The notes under the pieces were generated by a model that saw nothing but the letters and a program-made list of their open reading frames with translations, was not told the origin of the DNA and searched no databases. This document shows, piece by piece, positions 13,350 to 63,397 of a DNA stretch of 64,000 nt (position 1 is the stretch's first letter; the number at the start of each line of letters is the position of its first letter). Source of the stretch: Octopus bimaculoides (taxonomy: Eukaryota); NCBI RefSeq assembly GCF_001194135.2, contig NC_068987.1, forward strand, positions 105,100,491-105,164,490, read 5' to 3'. The translations under genes and the position numbers were made by a program.

Positions 13350-15260
13350 ATGCATAATTATGTGATTAAGAGGCTTGCTTCCCAACCATGTAATTTCAAG
13401 TTCAGTCCCACTGTGTGGCACCTTGGGTGTCTTCTAGTGTAGCCCCAGGCCTGACGAAACCTTGACGAAACAGAAACTGAAAGACGCTCACTCTGTGTGT
13501 GTGTGTGTGTGTGATGTATATATCACTGTCGTCGTTGTCATCATCGTTTAACGTCCACTTTCCATGCTGGCATGGGTTGGGCAGTTTGACTGAGAGCTGG
13601 CAAGCCAGAAGGCTGCGCCAGGCTCCAATCCAATCTGGCAAAGTCTTTACAGCTGGGAGCCCTTCCGAACACCAATCACTCCAAGAGTGTAGTGGATGCT
13701 TTTTACATGCCAGTGGCACAAGGGCCAGTCAGGCGGTACTGGCATCAACTACACTTGAACGGTGCTTTTTACATGCCACTGGCATGAGAGCCAGTCAGGC
13801 AACACTGGCAACGACCACGCTCAAATGGTGCTTTTTATGTGCTACCGGCACAGGTGCCAATCAGGTGGTACTGTCATCAGTTGTGACAATGACTTCACTT
13901 GCCTCAGCAGGTCTTCGCAAGCACAGTTTATTGCCCTATGATTGAAGGGTACTCTTAAATGGACCAGTTATGCTGCACTGGCATAGGCCACAGTTACGGT
14001 CTCACTTGGCTTGCCAGGTCTTCTCAAGCATAGCATATCTCCAAAGGTCTTGGACACTTGTCATCACCTCCGTGAGACCCAACGTTCGAAGGTCGTGCTT
14101 CACCACTTCATCCCAGGTCTTCCTGGATCTACCTCTTCGACAGGTTCTCTCTACTGCTAAGGTGTGACACTTTTTCAAACAGCTGTCCTCATCCATACAC
14201 AACACATGACCATACCAGCATCAGTGGTGCTTCTCTCTGGCACAAAACCAAACTGCATCACATCTAGATTAAGTCTCTCCAAATTAGTTGGGCTATGACT
14301 CTCTCCGATACTTTCATCACCTGATCTAACAATTTGATACCTCTGTAATTATTCCTATCTAATGCATAACTTTTTCCTTTGTAGCAGTGGAGTATGGTGC
14401 TGCTACACCAGTCATTGGGTATCACTCTTTCATGAACCACCTGATTTACTACAATACAGGTGACTAAACCATAATCCACACCACCAGGTATTTTAAGCAT
14501 CTCAGTGGTGATTCCTGATGAGCCAGGAGCTTTCCCTATCCTCATATCCATAATTGCTTTATCTACCCGGGTACTGTCGATTTGGGTAGCTGGTCCCTCA
14601 ACTGGGACAACATTTGGCAGACTCTCCTCTTCTCATTCATTCTCCATATTCAGCGGTCTTTTATAATGGCATCTCTAAACCTCTTTCTTTGCAGACTCAT
14701 TAAAAGCAAGTGCATCATCATCCATGCAGACACATTTCTCTCCTCGCACACGCTGTCTTGCAATCCAAAATACTTCAGTTCTTTGATGCTGAACATAGGC
14801 AAACTTCTTTTCTGCTTCTCCCTTGGCTAGGTGTACCTGTCTCCTAGCTTCCTTTCGAGCTATCTGATATAGTTCCCAGCTTCCCCCACTCTTCCAAGCC
14901 TGTTTCTTTGCTCTAATGGCCCTGCTTACAGTATTGTTCCACCACTGCGTTATGCTAGGTCTCGAAGGGATTTTGCATCAGTCACAGATTTGGTTGGTGG
15001 CACTCAACAAGCTGTCTACACACACATATATATATAGAGAGAGATGCATATATGCATGTACCATTATCTTGACATCACATGATGGCTGTAAACAAGCATC
15101 ATCATCATCATCAAAGTGATGTTGTTCATTTCCAGTCTTCCATGAAAAACATGTCTAACCACAAGAGGAAGGGCATCCAGCTGTAGAAAAGCACCTGCCG
15201 CATCAAACTCTATCTGACCCATGCAAGTATGGGAAAGTGGATGTTAAATGATGATAACAA
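13350..15260 (+). mobile_element. Family-F SINE split by the RTE insertion (head 13350-13512; body and tail 15010-15260)
   Basis: The head ends in (TG)n just before the LINE tail. The F body and tail resume after the LINE 5' end. Confidence 0.65.
13523..15005 (-). mobile_element. RTE-clade LINE, 5'-truncated with internal deletion of the RT core
   Basis: ORF2 remnants WWNNTV..AI..KK.AWK, GKAPG.SGITTEMLK, YKGK..ALDRNNYRGIKLLDQVMKV.ERV and QFGFVPERSTTDA, joined directly to WYGHV..MDEDSCLKKC..RGRSRKTW. Followed by a 3' UTR with three ~67-bp units and a (GAT/GAC)n tail. Confidence 0.92.
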
Positions 15261-21093: not shown

Positions 21094-21668
21094 NNNNNNN
21101 NNNNNNNNNNNNNNNNNNNNNNNNNNNNNNNNNNNNNNNNNNNNNNNNNNNNNNNNNNNNNNNNNNNNNNNNNNNNNNNNNNNNNNNNNNNNNNNNNNNN
21201 NNNNNNNNNNNNNNNNNNNNNNNNNNNNNNNNNNNNNNNNNNNNNNNNNNNNNNNNNNNNNNNNNNNNNNNNNNNNNNNNNNNNNNNNNNNNNNNNNNNN
21301 NNNNNNNNNNNNNNNNNNNNNNNNNNNNNNNNNNNNNNNNNNNNNNNNNNNNNNNNNNNNNNNNNNNNNNNNNNNNNNNNNNNNNNNNNNNNNNNNNNNN
21401 NNNNNNNNNNNNNNNNNNNNNNNNNNNNNNNNNNNNNNNNNNNNNNNNNNNNNNNNNNNNNNNNNNNNNNNNNNNNNNNNNNNNNNNNNNNNNNNNNNNN
21501 NNNNNNNNNNNNNNNNNNNNNNNNNNNNNNNNNNNNNNNNNNNNNNNNNNNNNNNNNNNNNNNNNNNNNNNNNNNNNNNNNNNNNNNNNNNNNNNNNNNN
21601 NNNNNNNNNNNNNNNNNNNNNNNNNNNNNNNNNNNNNNNNNNNNNNNNNNNNNNNNNNNNNNNNNNNG
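21094..21668. other. Assembly gap (N run)
   Basis: Ns. Other gaps at 2425-2434, 47632-47641, 49669-49981 and 63037-63398; most abut (AT)n or other repeats. Confidence 0.99.
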
Positions 21669-23699: not shown

Positions 23700-24530
23700 G
23701 CCTTTCAATGATGATAGTAAAAATTCCTTCAGCTGTAGGCCCAAGATGTGAAATTCAAAGGAGGGAGAATGTCAATCACATCGATCAAAGTGATAAATCA
23801 GTACTTATTTTATCAACTCCAAAAGCAGGGAAGGTAAAGTTGGCCTCAGTGGAGTGTGAACTCAGAATGTAAAGTTGGCCTCAGTGGAGTGTGAACTCAG
23901 AATGTAAAGATGGAAGAAGTGCCACTAAGCATTTTGTCCAGTGCAGCAACAATTCTGCTAGTTTGCCACCGAAATAATAATAATAATCCTTTCTACTAAA
24001 GGCACAAGGCCTGAAATCTGGGGGGAGGGAAGGGACTAGTCGATTACATCACCCCTAGTGTTTCACTGGTACTTAATTCATCGACCCTGAAAGGATGAAA
24101 GGCAAAGTCGACCTTGGTGGAATTTGAACTCAAAGTTAGTGGCAGACAAAATACCGCTAAGCATTTCACCCGGCATGCTAACGATTCTGCCAGCCTGCCA
24201 TCTTCACCTAAATAATAATAATAATAATAATGATAACAACAATGAATATAATGATAATAATAGTAATAATGCAAGAAATATTAATAAGACACATGACAAA
24301 CTTAGACAACTAATAATAACACCTAAAAATAATCTTTTCTATTATAGGTACAAACCTGAAATTTTAGGGGAAGGGCGCAGTCAATTACATCGACCCCAGT
24401 GTTCAACTGGTACTTATTTTATTCACTCCCAAAAGGATGAAAGGCAAAATCGATCTCAGAGGAATTTGAACTCAGACCACAAAGACAAACTGCCACTAAG
24501 CATTTTGCTCGGTGTACTAACGATTCTACC
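23700..24530 (-). mobile_element. Three tandem family-C SINEs separated by (AAT)n tracts
   Basis: Copies at ~23700-23960 (with a 35-bp internal tandem duplication at 23835-23904), 23985-24200 and 24325-24530. Confidence 0.85.
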
Positions 24531-29458: not shown

Positions 29459-30000
29459 GTTTGAACAAGCTGCACTGCAGTAGTTACCATGAGAGAAATT
29501 CTGATATTGGCTTTTTTGGTGCAACATGCACTCGTGTTTATACTGCTAGTTGGGAGATAAATCCCCGTCACCTCCAGCACTGAGACCACCAGGTCATGTG
29601 ATTTCCACCGCCCTTGGTCTTGTCAATGATGGATGCTCAACCACAAGCAGCGATTCATCCCCACCAATAGTAATATATATAGGATATAGGATAGCAGGAT
29701 AATAGGATATATGATAACAGTGTAATATATATAGGATATAGGATAACAGTGTCAGAACAGACACTGGTGTTGCGATTAGCCAGTGGGCTTGTTAAAAAAT
29801 ATTTAATGGTAACACAGGCAGAATTAATACCAAGAGGTGATATTTATGCTCATTTAAACGTGTATGTTTTGTTAGAACAAGCCATACTGCAGTAGTTACC
29901 ACGAGAGAAATTCTCATATTGACTTTTGGTGAAACATGCACTCTTGTTTATATCACTAATAGGGAGATAAATCCCCATCACCCCCAGGGCTGAGACCATT
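29459..30000. repeat. Diverged ~130-bp direct repeat (29459-29590 and ~29868-30000)
   Basis: GAACAAGC...CTGCAGTAGTTACCA.GAGAGAAATTCT.ATATTG...GGGAGATAAATCCCC.TCACC.CCAG..CTGAGACCA occurs twice, about 410 bp apart. Confidence 0.85.
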
Positions 30001-33808: not shown

Positions 33809-33960
33809 TGTGTGTGAAACAGGGTTCTTTCAGTTTCTGTCTACCGATTCCACTCATAAGGCTTTGGTTGGCCCAGAGCTAGAGTAGAAGTCACTTGTTC
33901 AATGTGCCATGCAGTGGGACTGAACCTGAAATAATGTGGTTGCAACTATGCCTGCACCTA
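33540..33960 (-). mobile_element. Family-F SINE: family-A head, distinct body, RTE-like tail
   Basis: A-type head and microsatellite, then a different ~150-bp body, GGAAGGGCATCCAGCTGTAGAAA-like segment and (GAT)n-like tail. Related pieces at ~9030-9300, 12230-12570, 19900-20195, 26190-26440 and 37040-37290 (all -). Confidence 0.75.
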
Positions 33961-34460
33961 TAATAGGTAGGCAGGCAGGCAGGACAGTCGGTTGGCAGAG
34001 GGATAGACGGACGGACGGACGGACGGACGGACGGACAGACAGACAGACAGACAGATATAGTGGCATGGTTATATATTTATGTTTTGTAATCATCATATTC
34101 ACATATTATCAATTTTGACTATTATTTAAATCTCAAGGTGCTGGACTTCACAGAAAAGTTATACAATATTGATGGAAGCAGCCATATGTCGTATTGCAGA
34201 TCTCTCTGACCTTGACCAGACTGGAAAATTTGACATTAATGCAACAGCAGTAGTAATTACATTAATACAGCATTTTATGTGGACTATGTGAACAAACCTG
34301 TATGAATCATAGTTTACTTAGTTACTAATCAAGGCTCTACACGACAGTAACACATCCATCTATTCATGAAACATTCCAGAGTATTTTTACAAACCAACAA
34401 ACTCAGCCTGCAAGTTATAGAAGCCAAATATCTCTCAAACCACATCCAACCATCTTAAAT

Positions 34461-34885
34461 AGGCGTAGGAGTGGCTGTGTGGTAAGTAGCTTGCTTACCA
34501 ACCACATGGTTCCGGGTTCAGTCCCACTGAGTGGCATCTTGGGCAAGTGTCTTCTACTATAGCCTTGGGCCGACCAAAGCCTTGTAAGTGGATTTGGTAG
34601 ACGGAAACTGAAAGAAGCCTGTCATATATATGTATATATGTATATATATGTATGTGTGTGTGTGTGTTTGTGTGTCTGTGTTTGTCCCCCCCAACATCGC
34701 TTGACAACCGATGCTGGTGTGTTTACGTCCCTGTAACTTAGCGGTTCGGCAAAAGAGACCGATAGAATAAGTACTAGGCTTCCAAAGAATAAGTCCTGGG
34801 GTCGATTTGCTCGACTAAAAGGTGGTGCTCCAGCATGGCCACAGTCAAAAAGACTGAAACAAGTAAAAGAGTAAAGAGTAAAGAG
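34461..34885 (+). mobile_element. Family-A tRNA-derived SINE (CORE-like; possibly octopus OR-type), young full-length copy
   Basis: A box TGGCTGTGTGG, B box GGTTCAGTCC, CTTGGGCAAGT CORE-like start, central (TA/TG)n and (GTAAAAGA)n tail. More than 20 related copies in the window. Confidence 0.9.
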
Positions 34886-36112
34886 ATACATTGGAAAACA
34901 TACCTGGTATTAAAAAAATGAGATATTATAACAAGAACACTTTTGATTATACATTAGCAACTCAATCAAAGCTGAGCAGAGGCTGTTAGCGACAGCAGCT
35001 TACAACATTAATAATACATTTGATCAAGCATTTCAATTTATTATAACCCAGTATTTTATTTTTTCCTCTTCAAGTCATATGAACTTGAATAAGAGCAATA
35101 AGAATAGCAACAAAGATAACAGATATATTACATATTAGGGACTAACTATTCTCACATTTGTAAAATACCATAGAGGTTATGACATGCCATGAATGCTTCT
35201 CCTGCCACATCACAAAGCAATTAGACACAATTAGATTAAATACGCTAGTAATAATAAGCCTTCACAAATTTAATTCAGGCATATCTATGTAATGAATCTC
35301 TAAAGTATGATATGAAATGCTATCCATTAGTTTTTTTTCTTTAGAATTTACTCCTCAAACAAGTAGTTCTTTTTTTAATGATACAATCATCTACAAATAG
35401 CTTCAATATACAATTCCATTTCTTTAATAATTCAAAGCAACATTTATTTACCTAATAAAACACATGCACTGGCACACACAGACACAATACAAAATTTCAC
35501 TTACACAACCTGCATGCTTATATATAATTGTGTGCTAATATACTTAATGAAGTGAACCAAAAACAATCTTTAACCATTTGAAGTAAAATTCATTATGAGA
35601 AGATAAGGCATCGGTGTTAATGACAACTTTTGCAAAATTTAAACTGAGAAGTAAAGTATGATCTTTGGAGTGGTGACAACTCAGAACAGACATGTTTCAG
35701 TCTTATTTAACATCCTCAGCTAAATATAGTTTAACATATACTTACAAAATCTTAGAATGACTGAGAGGAAACAGAGTTTTGTAAATGTTACTCACTGATT
35801 AGGTTACTTAAAATTACATACATAAATCCATACAAACATAAAACTGATCACCAAAGCAGTCTAACATGGACCAACAACTGAATTACTACCTCCCGCTTTG
35901 AAGCATTTGTAATCCAGGAACAGGAAATAACAACCAAATACTGATGCACAAAAGGGACAGATATGCAGGAAAAGCAGTAAAATGAGACAACCAATGCAGA
36001 CTCTGTGGAGTTAACGCTGAAGATATCACCCACATCATAAGCAGTTGTCCAAAAAATGTCATCACAGTATTGTCTACTGATGAGATAACCAAGCCAAGAG
36101 AGAGATATATAG

Positions 36113-36435
36113 GCACCGGAGTGGCTGTGTGTTAAGAAGCTTGCTTCCCAACCACATGGTTCCGGGTTCAGTCCTACTGCATGGCACCTTGGGCAAGTGT
36201 TTTCTACTATAGTCACAGTTAAATGACTGAAATAAATAAAAGAATAAAAAAGAAAGAATATATATATACACACACAGAACAGGTTTCTTCCAGTGTCCAT
36301 CTACCAAATTCACTCACAAAGCTTTGGTCGGCCTGAGGCTGCAGTAGAAGACACTTGCCCAAGGTGTCATGCAGTTGGACTGAACCCGAGATCATGTGGT
36401 TGGGAAGCAAGCTTCTTACCACACAGCCACACCTG
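36113..36435. mobile_element. Inverted pair of family-A SINE heads (+ internally deleted copy 36113-36250; - head 36265-36435)
   Basis: The + copy joins the head directly to the terminal tail (CTACTATAG|TCACAGTTAAATGACTGAAA). The - copy is the reverse complement of the same head. Confidence 0.85.
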
Positions 36436-37528
36436 CCCCTCACAGTCAACTACTTCCTCAATTTATATGAGAAAGTGATTATGTCTCTAATCCAGTTCTT
36501 CATCTAAATACTTTAACATAAAAATCAAACAATTAAGTTTAATCCTTCTTGATACATCTTGATTTAATATGTATGAAATACAACAAACTAAGAAAATAAG
36601 AAATGAAACATATGAAAAACTTTATAGTGAATACCTTAGAATTATATTCCAGCATTTTAGATTTTTAATCTAAAAGTGATATACAAAATAAAAACAAAAA
36701 CAAAGAAAACATTCCAATTCTTTGATAATAGCATAAAATGGTCAAGCATTTCCACCACCTTCCTTCCTGCTATCAAAGGTGTCAAGTAGGGGCAAGCAAT
36801 TGAAGTCTAGAAGAGCAAGATAATTTGCTTTCAGAGATAAAGCATATCACAGATTACAATTACTATAGACTGTAATTATAATCTTCAGGAAAATCCTCTT
36901 CATAGTGTCTTAAGAATGAAAGTAAAATATCTCTTTAATTGTCAAGAAGTTAAAGTGCTGAACTAAATACAATGAATTCATATGATTTCTGACAAATGAA
37001 AGGCTGAACAAATGAGAATTTTTTTGTCACCAGTGTTCTTTCTCATGTGTTTCCTGACAGCTGCTTTCATCATCATTGCCAGTGTCCTCATTTTAATGTC
37101 CTCTTTGCTATGCCTGTTTGGGTCACATGGAGTTTTCCTTAGACAGATTTTCTACAGCTGTATACCCTTCCTGTTACCAACACACTTGTTTTCAAGCAGG
37201 GTGATATGCCTCCCCGTGGCCAGACTTTTTTTTTCAAAACATTACAAATGAATGACACAACTTGTATGACAGAGACACTCATTTACAACTATCACGAAAT
37301 ATCAAAATATAAACAAGATAATATAAAACCAAAAGCATAAAAACAACCTAATCAGATATAATAATTGTAAGACTCACATACCAATACACACACACACATA
37401 CACACAGTAACGTAATATGTGCATATTAAAAAAAATGAATATTGCTTTTGCTTCAATGACAGCTGGTTCTGGTTGCATGATAAACATAAGCAGTGATATG
37501 TATAAATGTAATGTTATTACCAGTTCAA

Positions 37529-37820
37529 ATATGCTTGAGGCACATTCAAACTGGGGAACAAGCCATTCACTGTGTTTTGTCATTGAGAAAATTTCTCAGA
37601 GGGGTCAAATGGTGTGGATATTGATCAGTTTGCATCATTGCCTGCCTGGTGTCTGAGACTGAAGAGGAGACAACTACTCCGAAATACTTGCATCTCACAG
37701 TCTAGGTAGGTGGCGCTGTGAACTGATCTAGGTATATCCACACCATTTGTCTAGAAATTTTCTCCATGACAAAACACTGTGAACGGCTTGTTCTCCAGTT
37801 AGAATGTGCCTTAAGCATAT
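37529..37820 (+). repeat. ~290-bp imperfect inverted repeat (rod-like hairpin)
   Basis: The left arm ATATGCTTGAGGCACATTCAAACTGGGGAACAAGCC... pairs with the right arm ...GGCTTGTTCTCCAGTTAGAATGTGCCTTAAGCATAT. Pairing continues inward, with bulges, into hammerhead stem I. Confidence 0.9.
37653..37700 (+). ncRNA. Type I hammerhead ribozyme at the apex of a long fold-back
   Basis: Stem I CUGAGA/UCACAG; core CUGAAGA (37659-65); stem II GGAG-ACAACUA-CUCC; GAAA (37681-84); stem III AUAC-UU-GCAU with one mismatch; AUC cleavage triplet (cut after 37694). Confidence 0.75.
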
Positions 37821-37836
37821 GATGAAATTTATCTAT

Positions 37837-38043
37837 TTAACCCTTTCGTTACCATATTTATTTTGAGATGCTCTGTGTTTCTTTCAATTATTTTAAAGAA
37901 TTTAGTTATCATTAAGGTAATATTAGGAACATAAATTGTGACTAAGGTTTGGTGGAAGATTTTAATTCAGAACTTATGAAAACAAGACATTTGTACTACA
38001 GAGCCAGAGCTGGTTTCAGCCAGGTTGGTAACAAAAGGGTTAA
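37837..38043 (+). mobile_element. piggyBac-like MITE, second family
   Basis: TTAA-CCCTTTCGTTACC ... GGTAACAAAAGGG-TTAA. Confidence 0.85.
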
Positions 38044-38144: not shown

Positions 38145-38214
38145 AGTCTTACAATTTCGCATGAATAGTCAAACTACTGGAGTAGTTTGACTATTCATGC
38201 AAAATTGTAAGACT
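38145..38214. repeat. 33-bp-arm near-perfect palindrome with 4-nt loop
   Basis: AGTCTTACAATTTCGCATGAATAGTCAAACTAC-TGGA-GTAGTTTGACTATTCATGCAAAATTGTAAGACT, one mismatch. Confidence 0.95.
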
Positions 38215-38734
38215 CATATACCAATACACACACACATACACACAGTAACATAATATGTGCATATAAAAAAAAAATGAATATTGCTTTTGCTTCAATGACA
38301 GCTGGTTCTGGTTGCATGATAAACATAACTATACACTTGTTGTAGTTTTATGCAAATGGCTGGGGCAAGCATTCCACAAATATTTGTACTTTTAATATAA
38401 GTGTCTGGCAGACTCAGTATGACATATCTGACAAGATTGGGCCCTCAAATAACAGTCCAGAAAAATTACTTTCACAGGGCTAGTTCTGTTACTTCTGGAA
38501 AGGATTCATCTGAGACTCTGAGATGAATCTTCAATACAAAAAAAAATGTAGCTGTACCAGTCAGAGTCACTTATTTACTGACTAAATAAATCTACAAATT
38601 ATCATCATCATTTAATGTTCCTGTTCCATGCTGAGATGGGTTGGACAACATAAATATATTCATAGTACAATATTTCTGCATTCTAAACAGAACAATCAAA
38701 CACCAATTATATATATGTATATATGAAAAAAAGG

Positions 38735-39704: not shown

Positions 39705-40076
39705 TTTTATTCTTCTACTTGACTGTGGCCATGCTGGAGCACCGCCTTCAGTCAAACGAATCGACCCCAGGACTTATTCTTTGTAAGCCTAGTACTTATT
39801 CCATCGGTCTCTTTTGCCAAACTGCTAAGTTACAGGGACGTAAACACACCAGCATCAGTTGTCAAGTGATGGGGGGGGGGGCAAACATAGACACACAAAT
39901 ACACATATATATTTATATATATGATGGGCTTCTATCAGTTTTCGTCTGCCAAATCCACTCACAAGGCTTTGGTCAGCTCAAGGCTATGGTGGAAGACACT
40001 TGCCCAAGGTGCCACACAGTGGGACTGAACCCACAACCAAGTGGTTGGTAAGCAAGCTGCTTACCACACAGCCACT
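39705..40076 (-). mobile_element. Family-A SINE
   Basis: Near full-length match. Confidence 0.88.
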
Positions 40077-46543: not shown

Positions 46544-47423
46544 ACTGCTATGATCTATGTGTGTGCTTTTATGCACGAAGCACTGATATGAGAGGGTCTC
46601 TCAAGGCTAACAACACAGCTTTCGGTGTTCTAACATGACATCCATGTTAAGATGGATATAAAGATTACCTTTTGATATTAATACTGATTCTGTCACTAAT
46701 AATTAATTTTTAATAAGCCTACTGGCTATTTGCAACATCAGTATCTGAAAAGATGATAATATTTTATATGTAGTGACAGTGAAATTTGACTGGCATGTGG
46801 TGATCGGATACTTCCCACTGATGATTTCCAGTTGAATGAAATTACATGATGTGGGATTTCCAGTATCCATGGCAGATGATTCCTATCTGCCACAATCCAG
46901 GTGTATGCGTTTATGCACCAAGTGATTATATGAGAGCATCTCTCAAGGCTAATAATACCACTTTCCATTGTTTAATCATCAACTATAATAATACTTTTGT
47001 GCTTTTCTTCATCACAACATAAGGAAGGGGTGATGGCAAACTGGTGGGATGGTGAACATTCAACTCTGAAAAGAAAAATCAAACAGCGTTTCAACTCTGT
47101 GTGAGTATATGTGTGTGCGTGTATAAGGGAAGTATATGGACATTGACAAATGTATTCATTTGATTTACCATCCATATTTGTATATAAAATACTACAATTA
47201 ACCATCATTTTTTCATGTTTAATAACCTGTAACAGACTTCATTTCTCTAGAACTGTATGTATCCTGCTGCATATTTTTATTCACTTCAATATTTTTAAAG
47301 ACTTTAAAATATTATAATGTCTAACTCCATTGAATTTTTTTTATTGTATTGTACTACGGGGCTGACTGGCACTTAGTGAACAGGTTGAATAAGTTTATAA
47401 CAGGTTTATTCAAGAAGTTGAAT

Positions 47424-49668: not shown

Positions 49669-50931
49669 NNNNNNNNNNNNNNNNNNNNNNNNNNNNNNNN
49701 NNNNNNNNNNNNNNNNNNNNNNNNNNNNNNNNNNNNNNNNNNNNNNNNNNNNNNNNNNNNNNNNNNNNNNNNNNNNNNNNNNNNNNNNNNNNNNNNNNNN
49801 NNNNNNNNNNNNNNNNNNNNNNNNNNNNNNNNNNNNNNNNNNNNNNNNNNNNNNNNNNNNNNNNNNNNNNNNNNNNNNNNNNNNNNNNNNNNNNNNNNNN
49901 NNNNNNNNNNNNNNNNNNNNNNNNNNNNNNNNNNNNNNNNNNNNNNNNNNNNNNNNNNNNNNNNNNNNNNNNNNNNNNNNNATATATATATATATATATA
50001 TATATAAAACTATACATAATTTAAACATGGGTGGTCAAATGTATACACATATCTACTCTGTTCAACTCACTAAACAATTTGGTGTTTCCACAAAAGAAAT
50101 CGATAATGAAGGGATGATATTGAAGCTAATTAAATGACCTGATCATTTTTCCACAAAATTCAAACAAAATTAAAGTACCTTAGGCACTAGAGCCCCAAAC
50201 AGAGAGATGGAGATATGTATTAATAGATGCCACAAGTTTAATGAAAAAAGCTGACAATTTTTAAAGTCTGTGACCAAGACTTTACAAACATGTAACTGAT
50301 ATGCAGCTGAACAGTTAATAGCAGCAATAAATTTTCAACAGAGAGCTAACAGACAAATTTCTTGTGCAATATGACAAAGTATTTCTGACTACAGTCTAAA
50401 CTAAATTCATACCATATATATTTATTTGAATATAAAATGTAATAGATTTATTTTCAATGATGACAAATGCATAGCAGGGTCCTACAGTTTAACTGAAGAC
50501 TGCACCAAAAATCCTAGTGTTTCTGTTAACTTGGCAGACTAGCCTAATGTTTCCATCATTTTTCTAATATCTAAAAACGCAATCCAAACAACTTCAAATG
50601 AAAATAAAGACTCTACAGCTAAATGAAACAAAAAGCACTTTGACAAATGAGGTCTTCAATTATATCATCTCATTTAATTTAAGTGGTTAGAGCTACATTA
50701 AGGAAAAAATAGCATTTACATACAATGCTTGCAAATGTAACATTATACTTTAAAATAAGATAGTTGGAGCTGACAAATGATATATTTAACAATATTCTCC
50801 TCCCACATTCATCATCCAATTATAAAAAAATTGCCAATATATTTGAATATCGTTGACTTTTTTGTTTTATTTTTTTTTTGTTGTATTTTTGAAAATTCTA
50901 TAATAGTGAACTTTCTTTCTATCTAAATAGG

Positions 50932-61067: not shown

Positions 61068-63397
61068 ATGTTATGTCAGTATGTAATCAAAGGTCAGCCC
61101 TGACTCAGCTGAGACCTGATAAAGGCTTTCCAGCCATAACCATCCCATCATATTTTCACAGACGTTGTCCACTCCAGACTACATTATTCAAGGTGCACTA
61201 CTGTTTTTAAGACACTAGGGTGCGATAGGATTGTGACTTTCCTATTTTGAGCAGGCCAAGTGGCAACACAGAAGCTGAGTCACTGGCTCATGACGTCTAT
61301 ATTCTTGTTGTTTAGACTGAGTTCAGCTTTGACTGAATAGATCTACAATCAGAGTCACTCCTTCTGTGACCATCGCATCAGTTTTGATGTACCTATAACA
61401 ACACGATACAATGTGTCTTTCCTTATCTGAGTCAGCAGGGTGTGATTTGAAGGTTATTTGACTGCTATTTTTAGCAGGTCACAGAACCATGTAAAGGTAA
61501 AAACAAAACAGAAAGGAACAGTGTTTTTTAATGCTATAGTGGGTTGGATCATTCCAAATAAGTGCTTAGACTGATAAAACATATTTTACAGCTCAACAGA
61601 CTTATAAATACACAGCATAAAACTAGTTATTGGACCTGTCTATTGAACAGACAAATACCAATGTATAACACACCTTAGTAGCATACAGTGCACTACTATT
61701 GTTGAGAATGAGAAGTAAGAGAAATGACTAAAATTAGCTGCCATAATAAAAAGGGATTAAATTGAAATTTATTTCATATATTATCACTAGTAATCAGAAA
61801 CTATGGAAACTGTGCTGTACACCTAAAGTGACTCACAGATATAACGTCTGATTTATATGCATACATTTTGTACATATATACATACACGCACACATATTCG
61901 TGTATGTGTGTATTGTGGGTGCACATACCTATAAACACATGTGCATATTTATTTATAAACACATATCAAATCAATGAAGAAGCCTATGGAAGTGCTTGAC
62001 CTCCCTGAAATGCCAGCCAATTCTTTTTAAATCACCCGCAAACAACTTAAAGAAAGAATATCTTCGTTAGCATAATTTTACATATCCCTAAAATAACCAT
62101 GATAGTCACACCTGGAACTGACCATAGGTCTTCTCTATCACCATTATCCAGGAGTTAACAAACAACATATACACACTATATATATGTACATACAAATATA
62201 CATATGTATGTATGTACACACACACACAAGGTGTGACTATGAAGTTTGCTTCTCAACCTTATGGTTCCAGGTTCAGTCCCACTGCATTTCCTGTGGCACA
62301 TTGAACAAGCTATGGATTAACTAAAGTTAGACATGGCCTGGACCAATCTTTGGTTGAAACATATCTAAGTTTTATCTATGTTTTATATATTAGAAGCATG
62401 CTATCGGTAATTACTCAGGATAGGCAATAGACAACCTTTATGTAGTAAAACACAAAAAAAAATAAGAGAAACACAGGCACACAACTGAGTTGAAGGCAGG
62501 TCTACTTCTGCTTTTATAGCACATAAAGAAAACGGTGTTGTAGAAATGTACGCAGTAGGTGTACTACAGCAGTACTATGTGTAGCTTAAATACTGAGATT
62601 GAAAAGCAGGGCAAATTATACCTACCTAATCCACAAAAAATAAAACATTTCGCATTTTATGCACAGTAATCAGACTAACCTTCATAATTTTATTGAATTA
62701 GGGGCATATTTTGCCATGAGAGGAAAATGTTGCTATCGATCAATTTTATTCAACATAGGCACTGCCTACCTTGCCTACCTAGGCGGCATGTCCCTGATAT
62801 ATATATATATATATAGATATACAGGGCAGGGAATCGTCAATTAGTAATAAAATTAATAATTAACAATTTTGCCGGGTAGCTCAGTATGAAAAAACCTTAT
62901 CGGTAAAACCATTTATAATCATAAATATATAGGGATTAGCAGTATCCTGCTTCTCCAACATACTGAGAATTCAGAAATAGCAGCCAAAGAACTACTGATT
63001 CCAAAATTACAAATTTTTCTCTAATTGATAGCGATANNNNNNNNNNNNNNNNNNNNNNNNNNNNNNNNNNNNNNNNNNNNNNNNNNNNNNNNNNNNNNNN
63101 NNNNNNNNNNNNNNNNNNNNNNNNNNNNNNNNNNNNNNNNNNNNNNNNNNNNNNNNNNNNNNNNNNNNNNNNNNNNNNNNNNNNNNNNNNNNNNNNNNNN
63201 NNNNNNNNNNNNNNNNNNNNNNNNNNNNNNNNNNNNNNNNNNNNNNNNNNNNNNNNNNNNNNNNNNNNNNNNNNNNNNNNNNNNNNNNNNNNNNNNNNNN
63301 NNNNNNNNNNNNNNNNNNNNNNNNNNNNNNNNNNNNNNNNNNNNNNNNNNNNNNNNNNNNNNNNNNNNNNNNNNNNNNNNNNNNNNNNNNNNNNNNN

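What the first reader, a model, noticed from the sequence alone, without database searches (positions are those of the whole stretch)
37529..37820. Viroid/retrozyme-like rod: ~290-nt fold-back capped by an extended hammerhead ribozyme
Seen: two ~130-nt arms pair almost continuously and run straight into hammerhead stem I. The apex has an intact core (CUGAAGA, GGAG/CUCC, GAAA, AUC). Six bp from the core, stem I has a 3x1 internal loop (UGU/U), and loop II is ACAACUA. Known: that geometry resembles the bulge-loop II tertiary contact of full-length Schistosoma-type hammerheads (loop II CAAAUA). Seen: by hand count, non-Watson-Crick transitions between the arms are about 9 G-U versus 2 A-C on the ribozyme strand, suggesting selection on RNA rather than DNA structure. 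Inference: one A-to-G change at 37686 would restore stem III as AUG(CUUG)CAU with a stable G(CUUG)C tetraloop, so this may be a slightly decayed copy of a small self-cleaving rod-shaped mobile RNA. Known metazoan retrozymes are tandem repeats and plant ones are LTR-flanked; a solitary long rod with an apical hammerhead fits neither description.
Basis: partly seen in the sequence, partly recalled or inferred. Interest (0 to 1): 0.9.

Follow-up and report, generated by a model that had tools for sequence, protein, structure and literature searches.

The report
Foldback repeat with hammerhead-like tip
A 292-base inverted-repeat (foldback) element really does carry the conserved core of a type I hammerhead ribozyme across its centre, but it looks like a DNA-level palindrome with a marginal, probably decayed ribozyme motif, not a proven self-cleaving viroid-like RNA.

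Summary
The palindrome at 37529-37820 is real (RNA fold -167.8 kcal/mol, z = -18). Two things were missed. Helix I has an A.A mismatch at its third pair. The "stem III" bases are also the mirror partner of the CUGAAG core, because the palindrome's centre lies in loop II.

The motif is unusual but marginal. A lax descriptor finds only this site in the window; composition-matched decoys give p about 0.002 per window. A covariance model built from four verified animal type I hammerheads scores it 16.6 bits (E about 0.02). That is third in the window, behind two other hammerhead-like motifs. Rfam reports no hammerhead family for it.

The G-U excess (9:2) is not special: two plain inverted repeats nearby show the same strand skew (6:3 and 11:3). 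The element is far more self-complementary than verified retrozyme circles, so the arms look like a DNA-level inverted duplication with TA flanks. The energy gap to the hammerhead fold (7.9 kcal/mol) is within the range of verified ribozymes, so cleavage is not excluded.

No relatives could be retrieved, so conservation is untested. Verdict: partly supported, moderate interest.

The parts
37529..37820 (.). Whole foldback (inverted-repeat) element, 292 bp, GC 43%. TA lies at 37530-31 and 37818-19, just inside both ends, so it could be a TA target-site duplication flanking an element 37532-37817.
37529..37658 (+). Left arm. It runs into the 5' strand of hammerhead helix I.
37695..37820 (+). Right arm. 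It begins as the 3' strand of hammerhead helix I.
37653..37700 (+). Hammerhead-like motif, type I topology. Helix I: 37653-58 with 37695-700, including the A37656.A37697 mismatch. Core CUGAAGA: 37659-65. Helix II: GGAG 37666-69 with CUCC 37677-80. Loop II: ACAACUA 37670-76. GAAA: 37681-84. Helix III: only A84-U93 and U85-A92, with A86.C91 mismatched. Predicted cleavage site is after C37694 (AUC).
37645..37652 (+). 5' side of the extended helix I. CCUGG 37645-49 pairs with CUAGG 37702-06. UGU 37650-52 faces U37701 as a 3x1 internal loop, the candidate 'loop 1'.
37629..37649 (+). Inner helix segment, partner 37702-37722. It holds 9 arm differences in 21 positions (7 G.U, 1 A.C, 1 U.C), against 7 mismatches among 94 aligned positions (plus 10 gap columns) in the outer arms (Fisher p about 8e-5, computed on a hand-entered 6 vs 92 split). 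This is an unexplained transition cluster.
37687..37697 (+). CUUGCAUCUCA. In the plain hairpin fold these bases pair with UGAGA-C-UGAAG (37654-64). In the hammerhead reading they are the helix III loop, the cleavage site and the start of helix I.
37363..37492 (+). Context: left copy of a 130-bp direct repeat (95% identical to 38203-38331, 840 bp apart). The pair brackets the foldback, a piggyBac-like MITE and a 70-bp palindrome.
38203..38331 (+). Context: right copy of the 130-bp direct repeat.

Best explanation
A solitary foldback repeat, meaning a DNA-level inverted duplication with TA flanks, MITE-like, whose arms differ by about 9%. A degenerate type I hammerhead motif lies across its centre.

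Shown: the palindrome; the complete core on the + strand only; the defects (A.A mismatch in helix I, a 2-bp helix III, AUC before the site); and a competing plain hairpin fold.

Inferred: the hammerhead part most likely descends from hammerhead-bearing retroelement sequence (Penelope-like element or retrozyme type). Two better examples of such sequence lie in the same window. The inverted duplication then mirrored the sequence next to it. As a result, helix I and the 'stem III' bases are largely products of the palindrome and not of selection on a ribozyme.

If transcribed, the RNA should mostly form a long, near-perfect hairpin, a Dicer or ADAR type substrate. Self-cleavage after C37694 is possible but expected to be weak. 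I put true hammerhead ancestry at about 0.55 and useful cleavage by this copy at about 0.15.
For: - Palindrome: z = -18 on both strands. Its centre (37674.5) falls in loop II, and the arms reach the last base with TA on both sides.
- It is much more self-complementary than verified retrozyme circles: -0.575 against -0.21 to -0.34 kcal/mol/nt, 84% against 66-71% paired, and a 19-bp against 8-10-bp longest perfect helix.
- The G.U skew is shared by neighbouring plain inverted repeats, so no RNA-level selection is needed to explain it.
- The core is complete. The lax descriptor hits only this site and decoys give p about 0.002. The CM of verified type I hammerheads gives 16.6 bits, E 0.02, while 100 kb of phage T4 control gives at most 11.7 bits.
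- Two stronger hammerhead-like motifs lie in the window: 35679-35725(-) at 28.3 bits, also Rfam Hammerhead_1 at 15.7 bits; and 46812-46857(+) at 24.8 bits.
- Defects: the A.A mismatch and the register shift, AUC before the site, and no Rfam hit.
Against: - No second copy was found in the 64 kb, and no relatives in any reachable collection. MITE status (a multi-copy family, a true TSD) and hammerhead ancestry are therefore both untested.
- The energy gap between the hammerhead fold and the MFE (7.9 kcal/mol) is no worse than for the verified mussel ribozyme (7.4). 'Weak cleavage' is a judgement, not a result.
- The inner 21 bp is far more diverged than the outer arms. A single-age inverted duplication does not explain this.
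- The TA flanks are themselves part of the palindrome, so the TSD is ambiguous.
Confidence: 0.45

Rival explanations
1. Pure look-alike. This is an ordinary MITE or foldback repeat whose tip matches the hammerhead core by chance and has no ribozyme ancestry. Helix II is simply the tip of the hairpin, helix I is the arms, and CUGAAGA and GAAA are coincidences.
For: - No Rfam hammerhead family reaches E <= 10.
- The CM E-value is only about 0.02 per window and the decoy p about 0.002. A scan of many windows would therefore produce such hits.
- From the Markov rate (about 6e-9 per base and strand once stem I is required), I estimate about 30 chance matches per 2.7-Gb genome.
- The candidate meets the descriptor only minimally: helix III at the 2-bp minimum, one helix I mismatch, and the atypical AUC.
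- The 'stem III' bases are the palindromic partner of the core.
Against: - The match sits exactly at the tip of one of only about 3 long hairpins in the window. By my estimate (inference from the rates) that has a probability of about 1e-7 per hairpin.
- All 12 fixed core positions are present, together with G10.1-C11.1, Y15.2-R16.2 and C17.
- The internal loop comes after six positions of helix I, as in all five verified type I ribozymes examined.
- Two point changes give a near-optimal hammerhead fold.
- Other hammerhead-like motifs occur nearby.
Confidence: 0.28
2. This is a slightly decayed monomer of a small self-cleaving, rod-shaped mobile RNA, a retrozyme-like circular RNA. The whole rod is the functional RNA architecture and the hammerhead processes multimers.
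For: - Size (292 nt) and GC (43%) fit animal non-LTR retrozymes (PMC7229834).
- The motif has type I topology with a weak helix III, as in animal retrozymes.
- Solitary monomers are known.
- The ddG to the hammerhead fold is within the range of verified ribozymes, and two substitutions optimise it.
- A 130-bp direct repeat 840 bp apart brackets the region. This resembles the partial-tandem (pseudo-LTR) arrangement of Penelope-like elements and retrozymes.
Against: - The pairing is far too perfect for known retrozyme or viroid-like RNAs.
- The G.U skew is regional.
- There is no tandem partner or second hammerhead copy, and no hammerhead on the - strand.
- AUC precedes the site and helix I has a mismatch.
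- The bracketed 840-bp unit also contains a TTAA-flanked piggyBac-like MITE and microsatellites, so it looks like ordinary duplicated genomic DNA.
Confidence: 0.17
3. A hairpin-RNA locus (endo-siRNA or miRNA-like precursor, or an ADAR substrate) derived from a foldback repeat. Any function would lie in the long double-stranded stem, and the hammerhead-like tip would be irrelevant.
For: - Roughly 130-nt arms, 84% of bases paired, with perfect helices up to 19 bp.
- The + strand folds 16 kcal/mol better than the - strand.
- A weak full-length match to a long-hairpin miRNA family, MIR5998, at 27.5 bits.
Against: - The MIR5998 score is far below its gathering score of 180, and it matches both strands.
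- The strand difference follows from the regional G.U skew.
- No expression data are available.
- The arms are much longer than a pre-miRNA.
Confidence: 0.1

Closest known systems
Type I hammerhead ribozymes of animal repeats (Schistosoma Sm-alpha/N79, newt and axolotl satellite, coral and mussel non-LTR retrozymes; Rfam RF00163)
   Same: Core CUGANGA / GAAAY / RUH. Open helix I with an internal loop after six positions. A 4-bp helix II closed by G-C, with an A-rich 6-7-nt loop (ACAACUA here, CAAAUA in N79). A very short helix III.
   Different: An A.A mismatch at the third pair of helix I. Helix III is 2 bp closed by a non-palindromic hexaloop. AUC replaces GUC/GUA. It scores below every Rfam hammerhead threshold (no hit at E <= 10). 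It gives only 16.6 bits with a model of verified members. Helix I continues into about 130 bp of near-perfect duplex.
Non-LTR retrozymes / Penelope-like element pseudo-LTRs
   Same: Small AT-rich non-coding unit of about 300 nt with one type I hammerhead. Dispersed monomers exist. Penelope-like insertions often form inverted-repeat and partial-tandem structures.
   Different: No tandem copy and no second ribozyme. The pairing density is nearly twice that of verified retrozyme circles. No Penelope-like coding remnant was seen nearby. Similarity to pseudo-LTRs could not be tested.
Palindromic MITEs / foldback repeats (e.g. Stowaway or Tc1-mariner-type with TA duplication)
   Same: Under 300 bp, non-coding, inverted repeats reaching the termini, TA on both sides, AT-rich, and lying among other small transposon relics (a piggyBac-like MITE begins 17 bp downstream, after a 16-nt spacer).
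   Different: No second copy in 64 kb. The TSD is ambiguous because TA is part of the palindrome. There is almost no unique central region. The centre carries a complete hammerhead core.
Viroids of the Avsunviroidae and viroid-like satellite RNAs
   Same: A 250-400-nt RNA predicted as a rod with a hammerhead, and a more stable non-catalytic fold that competes with the ribozyme fold.
   Different: Here the sequence is encoded in a eukaryotic chromosome. The hammerhead is on one polarity only and is type I, not type III. The duplex is far more perfect than in viroid rods (my knowledge: about 70% paired).

Membership tests
Hammerhead ribozyme, type I (Rfam RF00163, clan CL00010) | Invariant core: C3 U4 G5 A6 N7 G8 A9, G12 A13 A14, A15.1-U16.1, H17 | tested here: met
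   CUGAAGA 37659-65, GAA 37681-83, A37684-U37693, C37694
Hammerhead ribozyme, type I (Rfam RF00163, clan CL00010) | Three helices around the core, with helix I open (type I) | tested here: inconclusive
   Helix II is 4 bp with G10.1-C11.1. Helix I is 5 of 6 pairs (A.A at position 1.3/2.3) and then continues. Helix III is only 2 bp plus an A.C mismatch, with a hexaloop. Verified animal members also have 1-3-bp helix III.
Hammerhead ribozyme, type I (Rfam RF00163, clan CL00010) | Score at or above the curated gathering threshold (34 bits) | tested here: not met
   No hammerhead family at gathering level, nor at E <= 10 on 551 nt or 73 nt. Another site in the window, 35679-35725(-), reaches 15.7 bits.
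Hammerhead ribozyme, type I (Rfam RF00163, clan CL00010) | Significant match to a covariance model built only from experimentally cleaving animal type I ribozymes | tested here: inconclusive
   Model R1 (coral, mussel, two axolotl): 16.6 bits, E about 0.02, third in the window. The T4 control reaches at most 11.7 bits in 100 kb.
Hammerhead ribozyme, type I (Rfam RF00163, clan CL00010) | Usual trinucleotide before the cleavage site (GUC, GUA, AUA) | tested here: not met
   AUC at 37692-94. AUC is described as essentially absent from natural hammerheads (PMC1636495).
Hammerhead ribozyme, type I (Rfam RF00163, clan CL00010) | Loop 1 - loop 2 tertiary contact and site-specific self-cleavage | not testable with these tools
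   Only the geometry is comparable: an internal loop after six positions, and a loop II resembling CAAAUA of N79.
Non-LTR retrozyme | Tandem units (two or more), each with a hammerhead, so that a monomer can be released | tested here: not met
   No other copy of the 292-mer in 64 kb and a single descriptor hit. Dead monomers are known, however.
Non-LTR retrozyme | Unit about 170-400 nt with low GC | tested here: met
   292 nt, GC 0.43; published ranges from PMC7229834
Non-LTR retrozyme | RNA fold comparable to known retrozyme circles; expressed as circular RNA | tested here: not met
   Fold: -0.575 kcal/mol/nt and 84% paired, against -0.21 to -0.34 and 66-71%. Expression is not testable here.
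MITE (TA-duplicating, Tc1/mariner-type) | Terminal inverted repeats, small size, no coding capacity | tested here: met
   (only short ORFs without homologues)
MITE (TA-duplicating, Tc1/mariner-type) | Target-site duplication TA | tested here: inconclusive
   TA lies at 37530-31 and 37818-19, but it is part of the palindrome ATAT...ATAT.
MITE (TA-duplicating, Tc1/mariner-type) | Multi-copy dispersed family with related autonomous transposon ends | not testable with these tools
   No copy in the window. No eukaryotic genome collection was reachable.
Viroid-like RNA (Avsunviroidae type) | Hammerheads in both polarities | tested here: not met
   No - strand motif by the descriptor or the CM
microRNA / hairpin RNA precursor | Match to a curated family | tested here: not met
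   MIR5998 at 27.5 bits against a gathering score of 180, matching both strands

The most novel reading that the evidence does not exclude
A so far undescribed kind of hammerhead-bearing mobile element. It would be a foldback (hairpin) unit whose type I hammerhead sits at the hairpin tip, with helix I continuing into about 130 bp of near-perfect duplex. Self-cleavage would open the loop of a long hairpin RNA. That could release a nicked double-stranded RNA, or process a rod-shaped retrozyme with far higher pairing than any known one. The present copy would be one or two substitutions from activity.
Probability: 0.12. Interest if true: 0.75.

Novelty: new member of a known kind. Interest (0 to 1): 0.4.

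Why it matters
If the hammerhead at the tip proved conserved and active in related copies, it would link two repeat classes so far described separately: palindromic MITE-like elements and ribozyme-bearing retrozymes or Penelope-like elements. It would also give a natural case of a ribozyme that cuts the loop of a long hairpin RNA.

As it stands, the value is mostly cautionary. A complete hammerhead core can sit in a DNA palindrome where helix I and helix II come for free. A G.U excess can be a regional mutational skew and not RNA selection. The window also holds two better hammerhead-like motifs below Rfam thresholds, which hints that this genome carries many decayed hammerhead relics that are worth cataloguing.

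Tried and rejected
1. Rfam. A gathering scan of the whole window and E <= 10 scans of 551 nt and 73 nt gave no hammerhead family for the candidate.

2. Relatives.
- blastn of the 292-mer against the window found only itself.
- A homologue search with the arm-encoded peptides found nothing.
- An exact look-up of two overlapping ORFs found nothing.
- Pattern scans with an arm motif and with the apex found nothing in the metagenome, viral and prokaryote-genome collections.
- An apex pattern with a free loop II hit one viral contig, which looks unrelated.

3. Harvesting DNA of the same species through a LINE reverse-transcriptase fragment. Only 4 distant hits came back, so the protein database does not hold this genome. 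Abandoned.

4. Exon hunting by six-frame ORFs to reach orthologous introns. The ORFs looked repeat-derived, so this was not pursued.

5. The thermodynamic argument against the hammerhead fold. The gap is 7.9 kcal/mol, but I rejected it as decisive after verified ribozymes gave 0-7.4 kcal/mol.

6. The G.U:A.C argument for RNA selection. Rejected after controls.

7. An LTR reading of the 130-bp direct repeats. Rejected by reading the sequence: no TG...CA ends at the repeat borders, no primer-binding site or polypurine tract, and no TSD.

8. A first CM alignment that included N79 was misaligned by MAFFT, so N79 was left out.

9. The CM hit at 23816-23855 is only a local helix I plus CUGAGG match inside a SINE. 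Discarded.

10. An assembly artefact is unlikely because the arms differ by about 9%.

Full report
OBSERVATION

The region 37529-37820 is a genuine foldback. As RNA, the + strand folds at -167.8 kcal/mol (shuffles -76.5 +/- 5.0, z = -18.3) and the - strand at -151.6 kcal/mol (z = -17.4). The repeat finder gives arms 37529-37596/37753-37820 at 91% complementarity and 37606-37621/37734-37749 at 100%.

- CUGAAGA at 37659-65
- GGAG 37666-69 paired with CUCC 37677-80
- loop II ACAACUA at 37670-76
- GAAA at 37681-84
- AUC at 37692-94
- UGU 37650-52 facing U37701

The hand count is also right. The MFE has 9 G.U pairs, and the arm alignment shows 2 A.C mismatches.

Two things were not noticed.
- The 'six base pairs' of helix I are five pairs plus an A37656.A37697 mismatch.
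- The palindrome has its own register, shifted by two bases. In it, UGAGA 37654-58 pairs with UCUCA 37693-97, and UG/AAG 37660-64 pairs with CUU-G-CA 37687-92. The midpoint of the element (37674.5) falls in loop II.

So helix II is simply the tip of the hairpin. Helix I is the arms read two bases out of register. The bases called stem III plus the cleavage site are also the mirror image of the catalytic CUGAAG.

IS THE HAMMERHEAD MATCH MORE THAN CHANCE?

I wrote a descriptor just lax enough to accept the candidate: core CUGANGA, a 4-bp helix II, GAA, A15.1-U16.1 plus at least one more pair, H17, and at least 5 of 6 pairs in helix I. Results:
- It hits only this site on either strand of the window.
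- In 80 Mb of first-order Markov sequence it hits 0 times, and 18 times if helix I is not required.
- With 539 composition-matched decoy cores run on the real window, it hits once. That gives p of about 0.002 per window.

Rfam gives no hammerhead family at gathering level, nor at E <= 10 on 551 nt or 73 nt.

I then built a covariance model (R1). It uses four experimentally cleaving animal type I hammerheads taken from the supplement of PMC7229834: coral Amil224, mussel Mg353, and axolotl Ax353 and Ax330. Scanned over the window without filters, it gives the candidate 16.6 bits, E about 0.02, as a full-length alignment. In 100 kb of phage T4 DNA of similar GC, the best score is 11.7 bits, and the number of hits at E <= 10 is as expected. 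The E-values are therefore sane.

The candidate is only third in the window:
- 35679-35725(-) scores 28.3 bits. Rfam Hammerhead_1 also gives it 15.7 bits against a gathering score of 34.
- 46812-46857(+) scores 24.8 bits. Rfam Hammerhead_HH9 gives it 13.3 bits.
- A fourth hit, at 23816-23855, is a spurious local match.

The motif is therefore statistically unusual for one window, but marginal. Its position exactly at a hairpin tip makes pure chance less likely; my estimate, inferred from the rates, is about 1e-7 per hairpin. The number of windows read by the first stage is unknown to me.

WHAT THE ARMS ARE

Three verified retrozyme circles fold at -0.21 to -0.34 kcal/mol/nt. They have 66-71% of bases paired and longest perfect helices of 8-10 bp. 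The candidate gives -0.575 kcal/mol/nt, 84% paired and a 19-bp perfect helix. This is the signature of a DNA-level inverted duplication that has diverged by about 9%, not of an RNA rod shaped by selection.

The palindrome runs to its last base, ATATGC...GCATAT, so TA lies on both sides. That is compatible with a TA-duplicating MITE, but it is ambiguous because TA is itself palindromic.

The element lies among other small repeats:
- a TTAA-flanked piggyBac-like MITE at 37837-38043
- a 70-bp palindrome at 38145-38214
- an inverted SINE pair at 36111-36440

There is no second copy of the arms in the 64 kb. They are therefore not a very high-copy family.

THE G.U ARGUMENT

The 9:2 excess of G.U over A.C has one-sided binomial p = 0.03. 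It is matched by plain inverted repeats nearby: 6:3 in the SINE pair and 11:3 in the inverted repeat at 33819-34622. The skew is therefore regional, a strand-asymmetric substitution pattern. It cannot be read as selection on this RNA.

One thing remains unexplained. The arm differences are concentrated in the inner 21 bp, 37629-49 against 37702-22: 9 differences, 8 of them transitions. The outer arms have 7 mismatches among 94 aligned positions plus 10 gap columns (Fisher p about 8e-5, where I entered the outer arms by hand as 6 mismatches against 92 matches; the correct 7 against 87 should not change the conclusion but was not rerun).

CAN IT CLEAVE?

The best fold that holds all hammerhead pairs is 7.9 kcal/mol above the MFE. 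I first took this as disqualifying. The same calculation on verified ribozymes in their natural flanks gives 3.8 (coral), 7.4 (mussel), 3.1 and 6.4 (axolotl) and 0.0 (N79). The gap is therefore at the upper edge of the real range, not outside it.

In silico, A37686G lowers the gap to 5.2, A37697U lowers it to 3.7, and both together lower it to 1.0 kcal/mol. The copy is about two substitutions from a well-formed hammerhead. That is what a 48-nt motif would accumulate at the divergence seen between the arms.

Points against activity:
- the helix I mismatch close to the core
- a 2-bp helix III closed by a non-palindromic hexaloop, so the dimer rescue used by amphibian ribozymes is poor here (inference)
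- AUC before the site. A kinetic study describes AUC as essentially absent from natural hammerheads, because it pairs with the CUGA core during transcription (PMC1636495). That pairing is exactly the one predicted here.

COMPARISON WITH KNOWN KINDS

The motif has the architecture of animal type I hammerheads. Helix I has six positions before loop 1 in all five verified examples I parsed. Helix II is short with an A-rich loop, and helix III is very weak (PMC7229834).

Size and GC fit non-LTR retrozymes. Dispersed dead monomers of such elements are now reported, so 'solitary' is not in itself new. Penelope-like elements carry hammerheads in their pseudo-LTRs and often insert as partial tandems with inverted copies.

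Two observations fit that world.
- A 130-bp direct repeat (95% identical, 840 bp apart) brackets the foldback.
- The 46812 motif lies between 79-bp direct repeats 342 bp apart.

However, the 840-bp unit also holds a DNA-transposon MITE and microsatellites. It may simply be a local duplication.

The giant squid genome paper reports 235 Rfam Hammerhead_1 hits (PMC6962438). I could not verify that this window is from a cephalopod. The reachable databases do not hold the genome.

VERDICT

The most likely reading (about 0.45) is a foldback repeat of DNA-level origin whose centre carries a degenerate type I hammerhead, probably inherited from hammerhead-bearing retroelement sequence. The palindrome supplies helix I and mimics helix III.

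Rivals:
- a pure chance look-alike on a MITE (about 0.28)
- a hairpin-RNA locus (about 0.10)

The decisive data are genome-wide copies and a cleavage assay, and neither is available here.

Noticed in passing
window 35679-35725 (- strand): The best hammerhead-like motif in the window: AUUUAG CUGAGGA UGUU-AAAUAA-GACU GAAA CAUGUCUGU U CUGAGU. It scores 28.3 bits (E about 7e-6) with the CM of verified type I ribozymes, and 15.7 bits with Rfam Hammerhead_1 (gathering score 34). It has a 3-bp helix III with a tetraloop, a GUU site, a U.U at the base of helix II, and a 6-bp helix I with no extension. No repeat copies were found in the window.
   Followed up: partly
window 46812-46857 (+ strand); repeats 46545-46623 / 46887-46965; related copy 29758-29879 (-): The second hammerhead-like motif (24.8 bits; Rfam HH9 13.3 bits). 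It has an extended helix I (5 bp, a UUUCC bulge, then 7 bp), but G at position 17 and a U.U at the base of helix II. It lies between 79-bp direct repeats 342 bp apart (77% identical). That resembles a 1.2-unit retrozyme or pseudo-LTR arrangement. The other partial copy of the flanking family diverges before the motif.
   Followed up: partly
window 37363-37492 and 38203-38331: A 130-bp direct repeat (95% identical, 840 bp apart) brackets the foldback, a piggyBac-like MITE and a 70-bp palindrome. It is either a partial tandem duplication or two copies of a small repeat. It does not look like an LTR: no TG..CA borders, no primer-binding site or polypurine tract, no TSD.
   Followed up: partly
window 37837-38043: A piggyBac-type MITE of 207 bp: TTAA CCCTTTCGTTACCA ... 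TGGTAACAAAAGGG TTAA. It begins 17 bp downstream of the foldback's last base (16-nt spacer). A similar left end (TACCCTTCCTGTTACCAAC) occurs at 37163-37181.
   Followed up: no
window 38145-38214: A 70-bp near-perfect palindrome (34-nt arms, 97% complementary, 2-nt spacer). Its right arm runs into the right copy of the 130-bp direct repeat.
   Followed up: no
window 33819-34622, 36111-36440, 37529-37820: All three long inverted repeats in this 4-kb neighbourhood show more G.U than A.C mismatches on the + strand (11:3, 6:3, 9:2). This points to a regional strand-asymmetric substitution bias (C>T and A>G on the + strand), possibly linked to transcription. Base composition of the window (A > T, C > G) does not obviously match the mammalian pattern.
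   Followed up: partly
window 37629-37649 / 37702-37722: A cluster of 9 arm differences in 21 bp (8 transitions) lies inside an otherwise roughly 93% matched palindrome (Fisher p about 8e-5). One idea is A-to-I hyper-editing of an RNA intermediate. That would imply retro-origin, but it cannot be polarised without relatives.
   Followed up: no
window 36111-36440 and 39905-40076: A head-to-head pair of tRNA-like SINE copies (108-nt arms, 86% complementary), with a third copy 3.6 kb downstream. Many further SINE fragments occur across the window.
   Followed up: no
window 14005-14977 (- strand): A degenerate non-LTR retrotransposon reverse-transcriptase fragment in several broken frames. Its only database relatives are four short metagenomic or contaminant proteins at 46-76% identity.
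   Followed up: partly
window 21094-21667, 49669-49981, 63037-63397 (also 10-N gaps at 2425 and 47632): Assembly gaps (runs of N) abutting (TA)n or (AG)n microsatellites. The window is a draft eukaryotic assembly, GC 35.5%.
   Followed up: no
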